The position numbers were made by a program, and so were the translations under genes. From positions 116,932,001-116,996,000 of the forward strand of contig NC_043000.1 in NCBI RefSeq assembly GCF_006345805.1: a stretch of 64,000 bases of DNA, written 5' to 3'. This stretch comes from Octopus sinensis. Its lineage: Eukaryota. This document shows positions 12,192 through 58,046 of the stretch, piece by piece; positions within the stretch are counted from its first letter, which is position 1, and the number at the start of each line of letters is the position of its first letter. The notes beneath the pieces were generated by a model. It was not told the DNA's origin. It made no database searches and worked only from the letters and a program-made list of their open reading frames with translations.

Positions 12192-12193
<2 letters not shown>

Positions 12194-12277
<84 letters not shown>
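12194..12277 (+). repeat. (TAC)n microsatellite
   Basis: Direct inspection. Source of the poly-Tyr artefact ORF. Confidence 0.95.
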
Positions 12278-12279
<2 letters not shown>

Positions 12280-13645: not shown

Positions 13646-14175
13646 TATAATAAATGTAAATTCAATATTAATCTATTTTGTTTTGTAATTTAAGCAGAAA
13701 CGTATCGTTTCTGAAGTCAACAAATTCAAGGACATACTAATGAGGAAATAACAAATAGCCTGCACATTCCTCATTAGACTCATATATTAATTTAGATATT
13801 AAACCAATACCTGTCATTTAGATATTAAATTACTATAAATCATCCTTCGAAATCTCTGAGGTGAACTACCAAAATCATAGCATGGACGAATTAATGCGCA
13901 ACCGCACATGCTTGTTACTTTCCTTGAAAAGGTTTCTTCGTGCCAAACAGGAAAAGATATTTTGAAGATCGACTCCACTCCGTGTTTTAGATTTGTCCCA
14001 TCTGAAAACTTAATCTTATCGCATTGCGATACCTGTGTTAGCGAGTTCAGTGAGAGCGTTGAACTTTTCCGTACTAGTGACTTGTATGATACGCAGATGA
14101 ACCTGCGGTGAAATTTGGGGAAAATATCAATCTATAGAGGCAGGCATGGCTGTGTGGTAAGACGCCTGCTTCCGG

Positions 14176-15480
14176 TATAGCGTTTGTTAGTTGGATTGTT
14201 GGTTTTGTTTGGTACACACTTTTTTTTTGCTGACTTGGTGGTGCGACGTCTTTCCTCTGGTTTAATGGAGAGGCGTCGTGTGATGAGTTGTGAGGATTTG
14301 AACTATTTTTTTTCAGAATTTGTGTCGTCGGAGGAAGAAATTGTGAAATGCTTGAACAAGACTGACGCAGCAATAGAAACGAGGAATTACGCTGCAGCGG
14401 CAAAGGGAAAAATTGAAGTCTGGAAGAGCTGGGCAGGTTCAAAGAAATAATCGAAAGGGAGGGCAACGATGTGAAAGTGTCAACCCCACCTCCCAAAGGA
14501 GTGTTAAAGGGTAAGGAAGAGAGAACATGGTGGCAACAAGAAAAATTGAAGTGGTGTCGGTGGCACAAGTTGAAAAGGTGTGGCAAGAGATATCCTACCT
14601 TGCGAGGGGAAGAGAGTACGGAACAGTGGAAGTGCAGTTTCGGGAGATAGCTACCACCAGACTGCACTCAGCTCCACCATTAAAAACCGAAGAAGTGGTG
14701 CTTCTACCCGTATACCTTGGGAGATGAGCGTCCAGGGTTAAGATAGAAGATATACCACCAGAGATGAGAATGTAGCCTGGCTGGTGGCTGCCATACGGCT
14801 AGGCATGGAAGAAAAGATGGTTGTCCTGCAAGGCCACCAGAACACCCTACAGAAACTGGCAAGGATAAATTCTGGACATGGTGGTACAGATTAACGCAGA
14901 AGATATTGAAAGTATGGTGGAGACAATCACGTTCGCAGACATGACGCCGAAAGTCAGACGGGAAGGGAGGATACCGCGGTGCTATAAATGTGGCCTGAGA
15001 GGCCACATTAGAGTGAATTGTACTCCACCATCACTGAAGACTAAAGAAAGGCAAAACAGTGAGAAAGTGGTTGTGCTCCACTGCTCGTGGACTCTGAGGA
15101 AAAGCACGAGAAGGAGAGCGAAGCAGCACCACAGACATAGACCAGTACCAACGCCTAGGAAGAGGGCTTAAACACCAGATGGGAAACGTCGGGAAAAAAA
15201 GAGGAAGAGGAGAAAGCGGGCACAGGTGCTAAAGACGACTCCCAACCCACACCTACCAGGCTCTCACCCACAATGGTAGTTTAAATTAATGTTTTTCTTT
15301 AAAAAAAAGGTTGTATTAACAGGTTCAGTGGAGTCATTCGGAGGTGGGGCCGAACGGCTCCATTACACTTTTTCATTATATTCAATTCATCTTTTCCATT
15401 CGTTTTTTTTGCCCTTCGCCCTTGTGCTGACCCCACCCTTGTGTTGACCCCGCCCTTGTGCTGCGCTCCCTATGCACAGC
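14176..15480 (+). mobile_element. L1/Tx1-like element carrying only a degenerate ORF1 (CCHC zinc knuckle)
   Basis: Track ORFs 14184, 14527 and 14878 form one frameshifted ORF1 with RCYKCGLRGHIRVNC (CX2CX4HX4C). No ORF2 follows. Flanked by the head and the body of a family B SINE. Confidence 0.7.
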
Positions 15481-15574
15481 CTCCAAGGCAAGTATCTTCT
15501 GCTACTGTCACGAGCCAACCAATTCCTTGTGAGTGGATTTGGAGACGGAAACTGAAAGAAGCTCGTCGTAAATG

Positions 15575-15607
<33 letters not shown>

Positions 15608-16445
15608 TTGTCCCCATCACCACTTGACTACCGGTCTTGGAGAGTTTCCGTCCCCGTAAAAAACACTGATAGAATAAATGCCTGGTTTAACAAAAAGATA
15701 TTTATTGGGGTCGATTCGCCCGACCGAAGATTCTTCATGGCAGTGCCCCAGTATGACCGCAGACCTGTGTCTATTAAAAGACAGAATATAACGAGCTGCA
15801 ATCTTGTAATGATCTCATTCTTCATTGGTTTTTGCTAATCGTCAAACAAGTTAATCTATTGGGTTGTCAAATGGATTTGTTCGTTTTGATTTTTCCCTAC
15901 TTTGCATTCCATCGTTATTTTTCTGAAAAGAGTTAAAATTTATTCAAGTTTCAAAAACAATAAGCGAAAATTGTACAGGGAAAATGGAGCCAAATATAAC
16001 AATAAACCTTAGAATAGACATATTTTTCGCGTAATTTCAATATCATTGGCGAATATCAAAATGAATGGAAAACGAACGAATTTATGTGGCAACTCAACAG
16101 AATACAAAATAATATGTAATATTAGGGTGGCGACCTGGCGGAACGGTTAGCAACCCCGGACGAAATATTTAGCAGCACTTCGTCCATTTGTACGTTCTGA
16201 GCTCAAATTCCCATGAGGTCGACTGTGCATTTAATCCTTTCGAAATCGATAAAATATATATCAGTTGATCACCGGGGTCAATGTCATCGACTCCCCCGCA
16301 ATTTCTGGCGTTGTGCCAAAATTTGAAATCAGCGCGTATTCCAAATCTGTTGCCTTTTTAGCTAGGCTTACAATTTAACAAATGAAAAATATTTTATAAT
16401 TGACAAATAATAAGGATTTTGCAATACATGTTTATGCATATTTCC

Positions 16446-16451
16446 TTTATT
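16446..16451 (-). terminator. Candidate AATAAA polyadenylation signal of the neuropeptide gene
   Basis: TTTATT on + strand about 85 nt downstream of the stop codon. The motif is common in AT-rich DNA. Confidence 0.3.
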
Positions 16452-16536
16452 TTCCCATTCAACAAAATTGGCAATATTTAAGTTTACAGTATATTGTTAG
16501 AGAACCGGTCTTATTCGTCTTATGAAAATCTCAGAA

Positions 16537-16857
16537 CTATTTACCAAGGTCTTTGAGTTTACTGTTCCATGCATCAGACTGCTGTTTATCAACTATGTTT
16601 TTCATTTTATCTAAGAGAAGCAAATAATCGCTGTTGTATGCCACGCCAGCACGTTTTCTCAACATTCTTTGGAGCTTCAAGTTCGTGAGCAACTGACGCA
16701 TACGAGACGCATCGTAATCATCCTCGATGCTTCTTTGTCTATTTCCGTCTATTTCCAGTGGAACATGCTGCATGGTTTGTGTCCCGCGAAACCGCATACT
16801 TTGGCAAAGAAGAACAGCACAGCACAACATGATCAGCGAAGCAGGAATCAAATTCAT
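16537..16857 (-). CDS. Secreted neuropeptide precursor (106 aa), ELH/CRF-DH44-like amidated peptide
   Basis: ORF from M43 of track ORF 16537..16983: MNLIPASLIMLCCAVLLCQS (hydrophobic signal peptide), then ...LQRML-RKR-AGVAYNSDYLLLLDKMKNIVDKQQSDAWNSKLKDL-GK-stop(TAG). It has a tribasic cleavage site and a Gly-Lys amidation signal at the stop. The ATG lies 4 nt after a polypyrimidine/CAG acceptor. Family assignment rests on recalled motif similarity only. Confidence 0.85.
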   Translation of the reverse strand: MNLIPASLIMLCCAVLLCQSMRFRGTQTMQHVPLEIDGNRQRSIEDDYDASRMRQLLTNLKLQRMLRKRAGVAYNSDYLLLLDKMKNIVDKQQSDAWNSKLKDLGK

Positions 16858-16861
16858 CCTC

Positions 16862-16915
16862 CTGTAAAATGAAGGAGGAAAGAAATTAGAACAAAGAAAT
16901 AAAAAAAAACGTAAA
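16862..16915 (-). promoter_or_regulatory. Splice acceptor (polypyrimidine tract + CAG) of the neuropeptide coding exon
   Basis: Minus strand reads ...tttatttctttgttctaatttctttcctccttcattttacAG|gaggATG. The AG is at 16863-16862 and the exon starts at 16861. Confidence 0.75.
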
Positions 16916-17016
16916 TAAAGATTAGTTGGAATAAGAGTAAAAAGAAAAATTGGATTGAAGGACTCGGTCCCGGTGAGAACCAAATGAATAATGGTGGCAT
17001 ATAATGAGAAGCAATA

Positions 17017-17691
17017 GGATTTTTACCTTTTCACCTACAGGTTTAAAAAGTAATTTTTTGTAACTAAACACGTTAAAACTTCGGACACTGGTAGAATGTT
17101 TCATATAAAACATCTTTTACTCTTAGCACTTTTGAGAAAAGCTTATATTTACGAAGTTATTTCACGTTAAAGTTGTCCTATTTCGGTAATTTCAACCAAT
17201 CAATGACGTGCATTCAGCTGAATTATATTTCTGCCGTTGTATGTCAACAACAACTATCGGCAGTCTATATTTCGTTTGTCACTGTTATCTATGACATCGT
17301 TCGTACGTTTTTACTGGTTTTAAGGTTTTAGGGTTAGAGAAAGGGTTTTAGGGTTAGGGTTAGGATTTTAGGGCTAGGGTTAGGGTTTTAGGGTTAGGGT
17401 TAAGGTTTTAGGATTAGGTTTAGGGTTGTTATAAATAACAGTGACAAACGAAATATACACCAACGGAAGTTCTTGTTGACAAACAATAGCAGTAATTTTA
17501 TTCAGCTGAATACACGTCATTGGTTGAAATTACTGAAATACGAAAAATTTAACTTCGTAAGTATAAGTTTTTCTCAAAAATGCTAAGAGTAAAAGATATT
17601 TTATATGACATATTCTACCAGTGTCCGAAGTTTGAAAGTGTTTAGTTACAAAAAAATATTTTTAAATCTGTCGGTCAAAAGGTAAAGATCC
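17017..17691. mobile_element. Long-TIR MITE with (TTAGGG)-like core and 8-bp TSD
   Basis: About 270-bp imperfect inverted arms starting ggatttttacctttt / aaaaggtaaagatcc. Flanks are aagcaata (17009-17016) and aagcaatg (17692-17699). Centre 17320-17427 is degenerate ttaggg repeats. Confidence 0.8.
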
Positions 17692-42204: not shown

Positions 42205-42618
42205 ACTAGCAGGATAACCCGTCAACCGTTGTCAGGCAATTTCTGTGATCCCATCATCCCTCACATCTGGACACCTAACTCTCCAGACTGCAACGCCCTT
42301 GATTATCATGTGCTGGGCGCAGTAGAGCGAGGGACCAACAAAACATTTTGTAACACCAAGGATCAACTAAAGTCAAGGATTATGGCAGCATTCACAAAGT
42401 TTAACAAGGAAACAGCCCAGAAGAGTTTCAGGAGATTCCGATGTCATCTGGAGACTGGGGTTGAAGACAATGGCGATTTTATCGAATAAATTTACTCTTT
42501 AGCATTCCAAGATACTTTTCTGCATTTTTGGTATATATATATATATCTGTTAGAATTAGAGAGCAGTGTTATTTTCATTTTTGAGTAATTTAGACGACTG
42601 TTTATTCACTGCACCCTG
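42205..42618 (+). mobile_element. Mariner/maT-like (DDxD) transposase C-terminal remnant with right TIR
   Basis: HIWTPNSPDCNALDYHVLGAVE...DNGDFIE*, ending ...gcaccctg|TA. Confidence 0.7.
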
Positions 42619-42887
42619 TACACACGCATACGCACACACACACACACATACACACACACACACACACACACGTGGTCGACATGCCACGCACTTGGAAACT
42701 GAACCCAGAACAATGCGGCCAAGAAGCAAACTTCTTACCTCACAACCACGCCTGCACCTATTGACTGATATACATACATACAACACCCCACACTCACACA
42801 TACGCATAATTATGTATACATTGTTTAATATCTTGGATATTGTTTACTTTGTAATTAAAGTTGTTTTTAGCTTTTACTTGCTTCAGT

Positions 42888-42906
42888 CATATATATATAT
42901 ATATAT

Positions 42907-42964
<58 letters not shown>

Positions 42965-43305
42965 GTATGTATATATATGTATATATATATATATGTATAT
43001 ATATGTATATATATATGTATGTATATATATATGTATGTATATATATGTATATATGTATGTATATATATGTATATATATATATATGTATATATATATACAT
43101 ATATATGTATATATATATGTACATATATATGTATATATATATTTATATGTATATATATATGTACATATATATGTATATATATATATTTATATGTATATAT
43201 ATGTATATATATACATATATATATACATATATATACATATATATATATACATATATATACATATATATATGTATATACATATATATACATACATACATAC
43301 ATATG
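42888..43305 (+). repeat. Long compound (AT)n/(ATGT)n microsatellite
   Basis: Direct inspection. Source of the 318-aa artefact ORF. Confidence 0.95.
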
Positions 43306-43982
43306 CATAGATTATGTTCTTTTTACAACAGATACGAGTATAGATTACTTTAATCTCCTTCTCCGTTGTTCTTCTTCAAAATCACTACGTAACATGTATT
43401 TCCAGGTCATTACATTTTCCTTTTTTGCACACATTTTTCGTATGTATTGGCTTTTTTTTCCCCTTTTTATACATATCTCTAGTTCAAAGCGATTCGTTTT
43501 TTTTCCTTTCACAAACACATGATACGACTTCCATCTCTTCTGTTAATATTCATTGTCTTCCACATTTTCCTTTATTATTCATTCTTCCTGTAATATTCAA
43601 CGTATTGTGACAGTTTGTTCTCATTTAACTAATCTCGATAACTTTTTCACCAAAATTAGTTGCCTTTTTCTCACAACCCGACAAATTATTCTGCTCGAAA
43701 CGTCAGCCTTCTGCCCTTTTTCACGGCGTAAAATATATTTCCTTGTGTGAACTCGCATTATAATTTGTCGGCGCAGATTTAACTGTTTTCTTAAATAATA
43801 TGTATATAACAAGAACACTTTTTAAAATTATATATAGTATTTTTACAGGGGAGATATGACTATCCGCAACTGTTGCTTTCTTTCTGACGTCACTTAGCAA
43901 CCATCACGATCTCGTGTACGATGATGTGTATATGGGGGGAGACACACAAATATACATTTGCATTTTATACATATTATATATA

Positions 43983-57115: not shown

Positions 57116-57479
57116 CAACATAGGACCGTGTAGGGTATGTTTTTATATCAACCGCTCAGCTACTACAGTTCATTTATCACATAGACAAACATTTTCATCG
57201 TTGACAAAGATATTTTGTAGCTGACGGCATTAAAATGTTTATTCCTTTTAGAAGAGAGAATATTTAGGTTTTCCTTATATTTCAATAAATAAATTAATCA
57301 ATTATTTAAAATGTTTGTTTGGTGCATTTACTCTTTGAAATTATCGTCACGTTAGATAAATTTCATTAAATATCTCTTTAGGCTATAAGCTGGAAACATT
57401 TATTATATTAGAAATAGAAATATAACATTAGAGTTGCTGACACTAGCGTTAATTCCACCGCTATCACGACCATCGCCAC

Positions 57480-57930
57480 TGCTGCCACAAAAGAAGAAGG
57501 AGGAGGAGGAGGAGAAGTAGAAGAACGTAAAAAGAGAAGAAGAAGAAGAAGAAGAAGAAGAACGCAGAAAGAGAAGAAGAAGAAGAAGAAGAGAGGAACG
57601 TAGAAAGAGAAGAAGAAGGAGGAGGAGGAGGAGAAGTAGAAGAACGTTGATAGAAAAGGAGAGGAAGGAAAAGAAGACGAACGTAAAAAGAAAAGAAGAG
57701 GAAGAAGGGGAAGATGAAGAAACACAACGTAGAAAGAGAAGGTGAAAAAGAAGAAGAACGTAGAGAGAAGAGAACAGGTAGAAGGAAAAAACAGAAGGGA
57801 AGAGGAAAAGAAAACTGAATAAAAAGAAGGAAGAGGAGTAAGGGGATAAGAAGATGGATGAGAAGGGAGAAGACGAATTAGTGAAGTAGAAGGGAAGCAG
57901 CGACGGAAAAGCAAAGAAGGAGAATAGGCG
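57480..57930 (+). repeat. Polypurine (GAA/GGA)n tract with recurring GAACGTAGAAAGAGA-like motif
   Basis: Direct inspection. Confidence 0.85.
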
Positions 57931-58046
57931 GAGGAAAATAATGATGGTTTCAAATTTTAGTAAGAGCGCCATCAATTTTAAGGGAAGGGAGTAAATCGAT
58001 TATATTGACCCCAGTGTTTAACTGGTATTATTTTATCGACTCCCCA

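What the first reader, a model, noticed from the sequence alone, without database searches (positions are those of the whole stretch)
16537..16861. Candidate ELH/CRF-like neuropeptide gene isolated in a repeat desert
Seen: signal peptide, RKR, then AGVAYNSDYLLLLDKMKNIVDKQQSDAWNSKLKDL-GK-stop, predicting a 35-aa C-amidated helical peptide (16650-16546). Established: molluscan egg-laying hormones are ~36-aa amidated peptides, such as Aplysia ELH ISINQDLKAITDMLL..., related to CRF/DH44. The N-x-D-h-x-x-h-x-D spacing and the L-x-D/E-L-amide end fit. Inference: a divergent cephalopod ELH/CRF-family hormone that may be annotated only as uncharacterised.
Basis: partly seen in the sequence, partly recalled or inferred. 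Interest (0 to 1): 0.8.

Follow-up and report, generated by a model that had tools for sequence, protein, structure and literature searches.

The report
Orphan amidated-peptide precursor candidate in octopus
A short octopus gene model really does have the layout of a hormone precursor (export signal, cutting site, 35-residue peptide with an amidation signal), but it does not measurably resemble egg-laying hormone or CRF, and neither its translation nor its conservation could be checked here.

Summary
On the minus strand, 16857-16537 is a 106-codon ORF. It has a hydrophobic N-terminus, an RKR site, a 35-residue peptide (16650-16546) and then Gly-Lys-stop. A strong splice acceptor lies 4 nt before the ATG and an AATAAA lies 86 nt after the stop. 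The exon sits in a unique, GC-richer island between repeats.

It is identical to the C-terminal 106 residues of Octopus vulgaris CAI9720977.1, annotated "hypothetical predicted protein". That model's first exon is about 124 kb away, outside the window.

The ELH/CRF interpretation is not supported:
- Pfam gave no hit.
- A profile built from 29 published lophotrochozoan DH44/ELH peptides scored -1.4 bits.
- hhalign gave 0.2% probability.
- The motif score was about 1.5 bits, against 13-39 bits for true members.
- Only a model anchored at both peptide ends gave a faint hint (p about 0.01 against shuffles).

No homologue appeared among 5.8 billion proteins, although other octopus proteins in that collection cluster with their O. 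sinensis and O. bimaculoides orthologues.

Octopods do keep two CRHR/DH44R-type receptors, and no ligand has been reported for them. The "missing ligand" reading therefore stays open but is unlikely (about 6%).

Best reading: an orphan, possibly octopus-restricted, secreted amidated-peptide precursor (about 45%). The main rival is a chance ORF in a spliced non-coding transcript (about 43%).

The parts
16862..16910 (-). 3' splice site: polypyrimidine tract, a possible branch point (ttctaat) and CAG acceptor (AG at 16863-16862)
   Evidence: Sequence. The 25-nt tract is 84% pyrimidine, top 0.8% of the 3272 AGs on this strand. The annotated protein CAI9720977.1 joins an upstream exon exactly here (...AVNL|RMNLIP).
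16537..16861 (-). Coding part of the terminal exon, from the exon start (GAGG) through the ATG to the TAG stop
   Evidence: 100% identical to residues 33-138 of P0001/CAI9720977.1.
16855..16857 (-). Proposed start codon. It is the first ATG of the exon, with A at -3.
16798..16857 (-). Predicted signal peptide MNLIPASLIMLCCAVLLCQS, with likely cleavage after C-Q-S
   Evidence: Read from the sequence: a 16-residue uncharged hydrophobic core and small residues at -3 and -1. AlphaFold models a helix at residues 6-24. No SignalP was available.
16660..16797 (-). Propeptide, residues 21-66 (acidic/helical spacer)
   Evidence: Helix 45-70. No DH44/ELH-like motif in this region.
16651..16659 (-). RKR prohormone-convertase site (context R-M-L-R-K-R)
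   Evidence: That it is cleaved is inferred from the known specificity of PC1/3 and PC2.
16546..16650 (-). Predicted mature 35-residue peptide AGVAYNSDYLLLLDKMKNIVDKQQSDAWNSKLKDL (Leu-amide after processing)
   Evidence: Modelled as a helix over precursor residues 76-104, block-mean pLDDT 64-77. Calculated monoisotopic mass when amidated: 3995.083 Da.
16537..16545 (-). Gly-Lys-stop: amidation donor Gly, a basic residue for carboxypeptidase to remove, then TAG
   Evidence: Processing is inferred from established carboxypeptidase E and PAM chemistry.
16446..16451 (-). AATAAA polyadenylation signal, 86 nt after the stop codon

Best explanation
This is the single coding (terminal) exon of a small Octopus vulgaris gene that encodes a secretory prepropeptide with no recognisable family.

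Proposed mechanism:
1. Translation starts at the first ATG of the exon.
2. The 20-residue hydrophobic N-terminus directs the chain into the ER and is removed.
3. A prohormone convertase cuts after R-K-R.
4. A carboxypeptidase removes the terminal Lys.
5. Peptidylglycine alpha-amidating monooxygenase (PAM) converts the Gly into a C-terminal amide.
6. The product is a roughly 4.0 kDa, 35-residue helical Leu-amide peptide that would act as an extracellular signal, most plausibly through a GPCR.

What is shown: the ORF, the motifs, the splice and poly(A) signals, the identity to an annotated model, and the lack of homologues.

What is inferred: transcription, translation, processing and signalling.

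It is not demonstrably an ELH/DH44/CRF family member.
For: - The ORF and its motifs are as described.
- A strong acceptor lies 4 nt before the first ATG, in good start context, and an AATAAA lies 86 nt after the stop. The ORF therefore fills about three quarters of a compact terminal exon.
- The CDS is a GC-richer island of unique sequence between repeats.
- Its amino-acid composition is more protein-like than 91 of the 98 other ORFs of 60 aa or more in the window.
- The feature combination is expected 0.012 times per Markov-simulated window, and appeared in 0 of 200 simulated windows.
- The published O. vulgaris annotation calls it protein-coding and splices into exactly this acceptor from an exon about 124 kb upstream. 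That pipeline used Iso-Seq/RNA-seq PASA assemblies and TransDecoder (PMC10700109). An intron that long points to transcript evidence rather than ab initio prediction; this is inference.
- The mature region is modelled as one continuous helix.
Against: - No relative was found in 5.8 billion clustered proteins or in 1.84 billion representatives.
- The collection holds O. sinensis and O. bimaculoides RefSeq proteins, which cluster with their O. vulgaris orthologues for other genes. This protein's cluster has one member.
- It has no Logan (SRA-assembly) source, although molluscan transcripts from Logan are present in the collection.
- It was not found in the text of two large spiralian neuropeptide catalogues or anywhere in the paper library.
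- The annotated CDS starts at an in-frame ATG 32 codons upstream, in the distant exon. If that start is used, the hydrophobic segment becomes internal.
- TransDecoder will call any ORF of 100 aa or more, so a coding annotation is not proof of translation.
- With the real window's own marginals, the crude feature combination is not very rare (about 0.25 per window).
- The helical-amphipathicity test was uninformative: real family members also fail it.
Confidence: 0.45

Rival explanations
1. A chance open reading frame in the last exon of a spliced, polyadenylated non-coding transcript, or a weakly supported gene model. The exon may be real, but the ORF is not translated into a functional peptide, and the signal-like, dibasic and Gly-Lys features are coincidental.
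For: - There is a single-member cluster and no annotated orthologue in O. sinensis or O. bimaculoides, even though these cluster with O. vulgaris for other genes.
- No family signal of any kind was found.
- Long ORFs are common in this window (17 of 106 aa or more).
- A quarter of the window's ORFs have a hydrophobic N-terminus under my crude rule.
- TransDecoder/EVM promote any ORF of 100 aa or more.
- Genome-wide, a handful to dozens of chance cases with these features are expected.
Against: - Given a real exon starting at 16861, an ORF that begins at its first ATG (+4) and stays open for 107 codons is improbable: about 10^-3 to 10^-4 by my own estimate from stop-codon frequency, not a computed result.
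- It also ends in the canonical Gly-Lys and has RKR 35 residues upstream. The joint features appeared in 0 of 200 simulated windows.
- The CDS has elevated GC and protein-like composition.
Confidence: 0.43
2. One reading: a highly diverged cephalopod orthologue of the ELH/DH44/CRF family. It would be the ligand of the CRHR/DH44R-type class B receptors that octopods retain.
For: - Octopods have two CRHR/DH44R-type receptor genes. One is 46% identical to mussel CRHR, 39% to Aplysia CRFR1 and only 21% to mussel PDFR. The two genes and their O. bimaculoides and O. sinensis orthologues are listed.
- No ligand has been found in any cephalopod (PMC6425005), so a diverged ligand is expected.
- The architecture matches: a peptide of about 35 residues at the very C-terminus of the precursor, followed by G-K-stop, as in the oyster DH44 precursor.
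- The best motif register in the whole precursor lies 2 residues after the RKR site.
- The C-terminus K-L-x-x-L-amide fits the family's [RK]-L-x-x-L-amide.
- The end-anchored model gives p = 0.012 against shuffles and 0.001-0.002 against random peptides.
Against: - Pfam ELH and CRF: no hit.
- Family HMM: -1.4 bits, and -1.1 bits on the whole precursor.
- hhalign: 0.2%.
- Smith-Waterman z-score: 0.73, against 7-11 for true members.
- N-motif: 1.5 bits, against 12.7-38.7 for members. The near-invariant Ser and Leu of the motif are replaced.
- The anchored test was designed after seeing the sequence and would not survive correction for the dozens of families a reader could have proposed.
- The receptors are well conserved, which argues against a ligand that has lost nearly all family residues.
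Confidence: 0.06
3. The hydrophobic segment is an internal signal-anchor of the 138-residue annotated protein, which starts in the distant upstream exon. The product would be a small type II membrane or secreted protein rather than a classical neuropeptide precursor. Alternatively, it is a secreted peptide of a non-neural gland, such as salivary gland or skin.
For: - The annotated CDS begins MGKRTLMVVKAQAKRTRNFF..., a basic 32-residue extension in frame with the ORF.
- Octopus salivary glands express many short secreted proteins with no homologues outside cephalopods (bioRxiv 10.64898/2026.02.02.703354).
Against: - The upstream exon is about 124 kb away and outside the window. The extension is just as well explained by a longest-ORF rule applied to a 5' UTR.
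- There is no similarity to any described family.
Confidence: 0.06

Closest known systems
Lophotrochozoan DH44/ELH precursors (for example Crassostrea gigas DH44; Aplysia ELH; Lymnaea CDCH; Pfam PF02323)
   Same: - Signal peptide, spacer, a dibasic site and a helical peptide of about 31-42 residues ending in a hydrophobic amide.
- The oyster precursor also ends ...L-G-K-stop.
- N, D, L and D fall at the family's N-x-D...L-x-D positions, and the C-terminus fits [KR]-L-x-x-L-amide.
   Different: - It lacks the family core LS[IV]N..L.SLA[DN]ML. The motif scores about 1.5 bits against 13-39 bits for members, including annelid and nemertean ones.
- HMM, hhalign and pairwise statistics are indistinguishable from shuffles.
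- It has one peptide copy rather than the 2-16 typical of non-gastropod spiralians.
Vertebrate CRH/urocortin precursors (Pfam PF00473)
   Same: From established knowledge, not tested here: the whole prepropeptide lies in the last exon with the intron in the 5' UTR, and the bioactive amidated peptide sits at the extreme C-terminus followed by Gly-Lys-stop.
   Different: - No sequence similarity: no Pfam hit.
- This layout is shared by many unrelated peptide genes, so it is not diagnostic.
PDF/PDH precursors and other class B GPCR ligands (Pfam Pigment_DH, Hormone_2, calcitonin and PTH families)
   Same: A precursor of about 100 residues carrying a single C-terminal amidated helical peptide after a basic site. 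The layout of these precursors is recalled from established knowledge; only the absence of a Pfam match was tested here. Octopus has PDFR and PDFR-related receptors (PMC7200681).
   Different: - The peptide is 35 residues rather than about 18-20.
- No Pfam match to any of these families at E <= 10.
Taxonomically restricted short secreted proteins of octopus (the 27 salivary-gland superfamilies of unknown function, bioRxiv 2026)
   Same: Short, secreted and without homologues outside cephalopods.
   Different: Those families were defined from highly expressed transcripts and have members in several species. This ORF has no detected relative even within Octopus.

Membership tests
ELH/DH44/CRF peptide family | Conserved N-terminal receptor-activating motif (LS[IV]N-x-x-L-x-[SA]-[LI]-[AT]-[DN]-M-L in spiralians) | tested here: not met
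   The best register is VAYNSDYLLLLDKM. It scores 1.4 bits with the background-pseudocount PSSM (27% of shuffles score at least as high) and 1.56 bits with BLOSUM pseudocounts. Members scored leave-one-out reach 12.7-38.7 bits.
ELH/DH44/CRF peptide family | Statistically significant profile or sequence similarity to family members | tested here: not met
   Pfam ELH and CRF gave no hit. The custom HMM scored -1.4 bits on the peptide and -1.1 bits on the precursor. hhalign gave 0.2%. The Smith-Waterman z-score was 0.73, against 7-11 for members. The post-hoc end-anchored model gave p = 0.012, which is a hint only.
ELH/DH44/CRF peptide family | Peptide of about 30-45 residues released at dibasic sites, with a C-terminal Gly amidation signal and a hydrophobic amidated end | tested here: met
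   RKR, then 35 residues, then G-K-stop, giving Leu-amide. This feature is not specific to the family.
ELH/DH44/CRF peptide family | A cognate CRHR/DH44R-type class B receptor is present in the same genome | tested here: met
   O. vulgaris has CAI9735959.1 and CAI9726726.1, with orthologues in O. bimaculoides and O. sinensis and one receptor in Argonauta. One receptor is 46% identical to mussel CRHR, 39% to Aplysia CRFR1 and 21% to mussel PDFR.
ELH/DH44/CRF peptide family | The peptide activates that receptor | not testable with these tools
   This needs a receptor assay with synthetic amidated peptide.
ELH/DH44/CRF peptide family | Orthologues in related species that link it to the family (conservation concentrated on the mature peptide) | tested here: inconclusive
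   No protein relative was found in 5.8 billion or 1.84 billion sequence sets, and the cluster has a single member. No cephalopod genome DNA is available in these tools, and the metagenome scan was empty.
Secretory neuropeptide / peptide-hormone precursor (generic) | Cleavable N-terminal signal peptide | tested here: inconclusive
   There is a 16-residue uncharged hydrophobic core with C-Q-S at positions -3 to -1 (sequence), modelled as a helix. SignalP was not available. The n-region has no positive charge. The annotated model places 32 residues in front of it.
Secretory neuropeptide / peptide-hormone precursor (generic) | Transcribed, translated and processed in neurons or endocrine cells | not testable with these tools
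   The only evidence is indirect: an annotated spliced model from a pipeline that used Iso-Seq and RNA-seq.
PDF / glucagon-PACAP / calcitonin-DH31 / PTH ligand families | Match to the family profile | tested here: not met
   hmmscan against Pfam-A at E <= 10 returned no peptide-hormone family for the peptide, the propeptide plus peptide, or the whole precursor.

The most novel reading that the evidence does not exclude
The 35-residue Leu-amide peptide is the long-missing, extremely diverged DH44/ELH/CRF-type ligand of cephalopods. It would act on one or both of the CRHR/DH44R-type receptors that octopods retain. The family would then not have been lost in cephalopods, as was proposed in 2019, but would have diverged beyond the reach of homology searches.
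Probability: 0.06. Interest if true: 0.8.

Novelty: new member of a known kind. Interest (0 to 1): 0.35.

Why it matters
A 2019 survey reported cephalopods as the one molluscan class with no ELH/DH44 peptide and proposed a likely loss (PMC6425005). One or more ligands are therefore unaccounted for.

A genomic candidate with the right size, position in its precursor and amidated end can be tested directly with a synthetic peptide and two cloned receptors.

Even if it is not that ligand, a genuine octopus-restricted amidated peptide would add to a neuropeptide repertoire that the same survey found had no lineage-specific expansions in cephalopods. If it is a chance ORF, it shows that prepropeptide-like features plus a coding annotation are not enough in a repeat-rich, AT-rich genome.

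Tried and rejected
- **Homology searches.** The word-indexed search of 5.8 billion proteins and the full HMMER search of 1.84 billion representatives returned only the self-hit.
- **Pfam.** Scans of the precursor, of the propeptide plus peptide, and of the peptide alone found nothing relevant. The one hit was a 14-bit cadherin fragment, which is noise.
- **Annotated exon 1.** It is not in the window. The gene range is about 124 kb, so no DNA was returned.
- **Family tests.** HMM, PSSM, hhalign and Smith-Waterman against shuffles were all negative.
- **Helical hydrophobic moment.** It was not above shuffles, but real DH44/ELH peptides fail the same test (median p = 0.39). The test has no power and I dropped it.
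- **Profile search for a canonical cephalopod DH44.** The second returned only 3 hits, none from a cephalopod, because of the word index. It is uninformative.
- **Metagenome scan for host-derived cephalopod contigs.** Nothing found.
- **Octopus coding DNA for a codon-usage model.** I tried to fetch it through the receptor gene, but the gene was too long and no DNA was returned.
- **Text searches for peptide fragments.** Nothing in the paper library or in the supplements of two neuropeptide catalogues.
- **Non-coding RNA.** Rfam and tRNA scans of the window were empty.
- **Bacterial promoter/terminator scan.** Irrelevant for a eukaryote.
- **Second DH44-like copy in the propeptide (SIEDDYDA...).** Considered and rejected: -7.2 bits.
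- **Paralogues in the window.** None.

Full report
**1. What is in the sequence**

On the minus strand, 16857-16537 translates without interruption to a 106-residue product:

MNLIPASLIMLCCAVLLCQSMRFRGTQTMQHVPLEIDGNRQRSIEDDYDASRMRQLLTNLKLQRMLRKRAGVAYNSDYLLLLDKMKNIVDKQQSDAWNSKLKDLGK-stop

- It is preceded by R-K-R (16659-16651) and followed by Gly-Lys-TAG (16545-16537).
- Residues 1-20 form an uncharged hydrophobic stretch ending C-Q-S. This fits the -3/-1 rule for signal peptidase. I read this from the sequence; SignalP was not available.

- A CAG acceptor with its G at 16862 follows a 25-nt tract that is 84% pyrimidine. That places it in the top 0.8% of the 3272 AG dinucleotides on this strand. 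It lies 4 nt before the ATG, which is the first ATG of the exon and has A at -3.
- An AATAAA lies 86 nt after the stop.
- The CDS is 42% GC against 34-35% in both flanks. The block 16332-17016 is the only stretch around it that has no other copy in the window, and it is bracketed by dispersed repeats.

**2. Where it comes from and what is annotated**

The ORF is 100% identical to residues 33-138 of CAI9720977.1, "Hypothetical predicted protein [Octopus vulgaris]".
- The first 32 residues of that model (MGKRTLMVVKAQAKRTRNFFTVQLPFLAVNL-R) are not encoded anywhere in the window.
- The gene spans about 124 kb on a 177-Mb chromosome. The model therefore splices from a far upstream exon into exactly the acceptor at 16862/16861.
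- The published annotation combined Iso-Seq/RNA-seq PASA assemblies, TransDecoder, protein alignments and ab initio predictors through EVM (PMC10700109).
- I infer that a 124-kb intron comes from transcript evidence. I also infer that the N-terminal extension is a longest-ORF artefact of a 5' UTR. Neither inference could be checked here.

**3. Is it more than chance?**

- ORF length alone is not informative. The window holds 17 ATG-ORFs of 106 aa or more, mostly in simple repeats.
- I counted ORFs of 60 aa or more that combine a hydrophobic N-terminus, a dibasic site 15-45 residues before the end, and G[KR]-stop. This ORF is the only one of 99 in the window.
- The same combination appeared in none of 200 windows simulated from a second-order Markov model. 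The expectation from marginal frequencies is 0.012 per window.
- Using the real window's own marginals, which are inflated by repeats, the expectation is about 0.25.
- A top-0.8% acceptor within 10 nt of the ATG adds a factor of about 0.004.

For one window this is well beyond chance. Across roughly 43,000 windows of a genome of about 2.8 Gb, between a few and a few dozen coincidences would remain, so orthogonal evidence is needed.

**4. Test of the ELH/CRF interpretation**

Pfam-A, which contains the ELH and CRF models, reported no relevant family at E <= 10 for the precursor, the propeptide plus peptide, or the peptide alone.

I took 29 mature DH44/ELH peptides from Supplementary Note S2 of De Oliveira et al. 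2019 (PMC6425005). They come from bivalves, scaphopods, a chiton, gastropods, Platynereis and nemerteans.

| Test | Candidate peptide | True family members |
|---|---|---|
| HMMER profile | -1.4 bits; 87% of own shuffles score at least as high | not scored |
| HMMER profile, whole precursor | -1.1 bits | not scored |
| hhalign against the family alignment | 0.2% probability | not scored |
| 14-column motif matrix, background pseudocounts | 1.4 bits; 27% of shuffles match it | 22-38 bits |
| 14-column motif matrix, BLOSUM pseudocounts | 1.56 bits | 12.7-38.7 bits (leave-one-out) |

- N, D, L and D coincide with the family. The near-invariant Ser and Leu and the A-D-M-L core do not.
- I then built a post-hoc model that anchors a C-terminal 9-mer at the amidated end and restricts the N-motif to the first nine offsets. 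It gives 3.6 bits in total, with p = 0.012 against own-composition shuffles and 0.001-0.002 against random peptides.
- I treat that as a faint hint. It would not survive correction for the number of families a reader could have proposed.
- Helical amphipathicity was not above shuffles, but genuine family members fail that test as well, so it says nothing.
- AlphaFold, run without an alignment, models the mature region as a single helix at moderate confidence: precursor residues 76-104, block-mean pLDDT 64-77.

**5. Context that keeps the idea alive**

- De Oliveira et al. reported that no ELH/DH44 sequence could be retrieved from any cephalopod data set. They proposed a likely loss in the lineage.
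- I found no later report of a cephalopod DH44/ELH in the library.
- A search with mussel CRHR returned clear octopod orthologues. O. vulgaris CAI9735959.1 is 46% identical to it (347 bits), ranking with annelid and brachiopod CRHRs and above vertebrate ones.
- That same octopus protein is 39% identical to Aplysia CRFR1 but only 21% identical to mussel PDFR.
- Cluster listings show two distinct receptor genes in O. vulgaris, O. bimaculoides and O. sinensis, and one in Argonauta.
- A transcript annotated as CRHR2 has been measured in O. maya (PMC6522055). CRF-like immunoreactivity in the O. vulgaris optic lobe is cited in the literature.
- A ligand is therefore expected and unidentified. The candidate has the right length, position in its precursor and amidated end. 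The oyster DH44 precursor also ends ...L-G-K-stop.

**6. Evidence against a conserved coding gene**

- The same listings show that O. vulgaris proteins normally share a 90% cluster with their O. bimaculoides and O. sinensis RefSeq orthologues. The candidate's cluster has one member and only ENA-derived sources.
- Neither the 5.8-billion word-indexed search nor the 1.84-billion full HMMER search found any relative.
- Fragments of the sequence do not occur in the paper library or in two large neuropeptide catalogues.
A metagenome scan for stray host contigs was empty.

**7. Verdict**

- Most likely (about 45%): a genuine but orphan, possibly octopus-restricted, secretory precursor. It would be processed by signal peptidase, a prohormone convertase at RKR, a carboxypeptidase and PAM into a 35-residue helical Leu-amide peptide of 3995.08 Da, acting as an extracellular signal.
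- Almost as likely (about 43%): a coincidental ORF in a spliced non-coding transcript that an ORF-based pipeline promoted to "protein".
- About 6%: membership of ELH/DH44/CRF. That family failed the tests of its defining motif and of profile similarity. I keep it as the most novel reading not excluded, because the receptors exist without a known ligand.
- About 6%: the 138-residue form with an internal signal-anchor, or a product of a non-neural gland.

The decisive work is cheap: cross-cephalopod alignment of this exon, read mapping at the 16861 junction, a targeted mass search, and a two-receptor cAMP assay.

Noticed in passing
window 17320-17427: An interstitial telomere-like array, (TTAGGG)n of about 15 units (also read as a 20-nt period). 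It lies in the intron about 460 nt upstream of the candidate exon.
   Followed up: no
window 12192-12278: A perfect (ACT)29 trinucleotide microsatellite with 100% matches.
   Followed up: no
window 15500-15762, 16122-16331, 17017-17691: Dispersed SINE-like repeats and (CA)n/(TA)n tracts bracket the exon. The first block has up to 116 matches elsewhere in the window and the second has 14. ARAGORN and Rfam recognise no tRNA or RNA family in them.
   Followed up: partly
window 14000-15500 (ORF 14074-14667, minus strand): A GC-richer block (45% GC in 14001-16000) holds a 197-aa ORF rich in Ser, Pro and Leu. It has no Pfam match and may be a transposon remnant.
   Followed up: partly
window 42566-43522 and 57403-57975: Long open frames created by imperfect TA/TG-rich and CT-rich simple repeats (YIYIYI... 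and SSSLLLFFF... translations). They show that ORF length alone is not evidence of coding in this window.
   Followed up: no
outside the window: O. vulgaris CAI9735959.1 and CAI9726726.1: Octopods carry two CRHR/DH44R-type class B receptor genes, with orthologues in O. bimaculoides and O. sinensis and one receptor in Argonauta hians. No DH44/ELH/CRF-type ligand has been reported in any cephalopod.
   Followed up: partly
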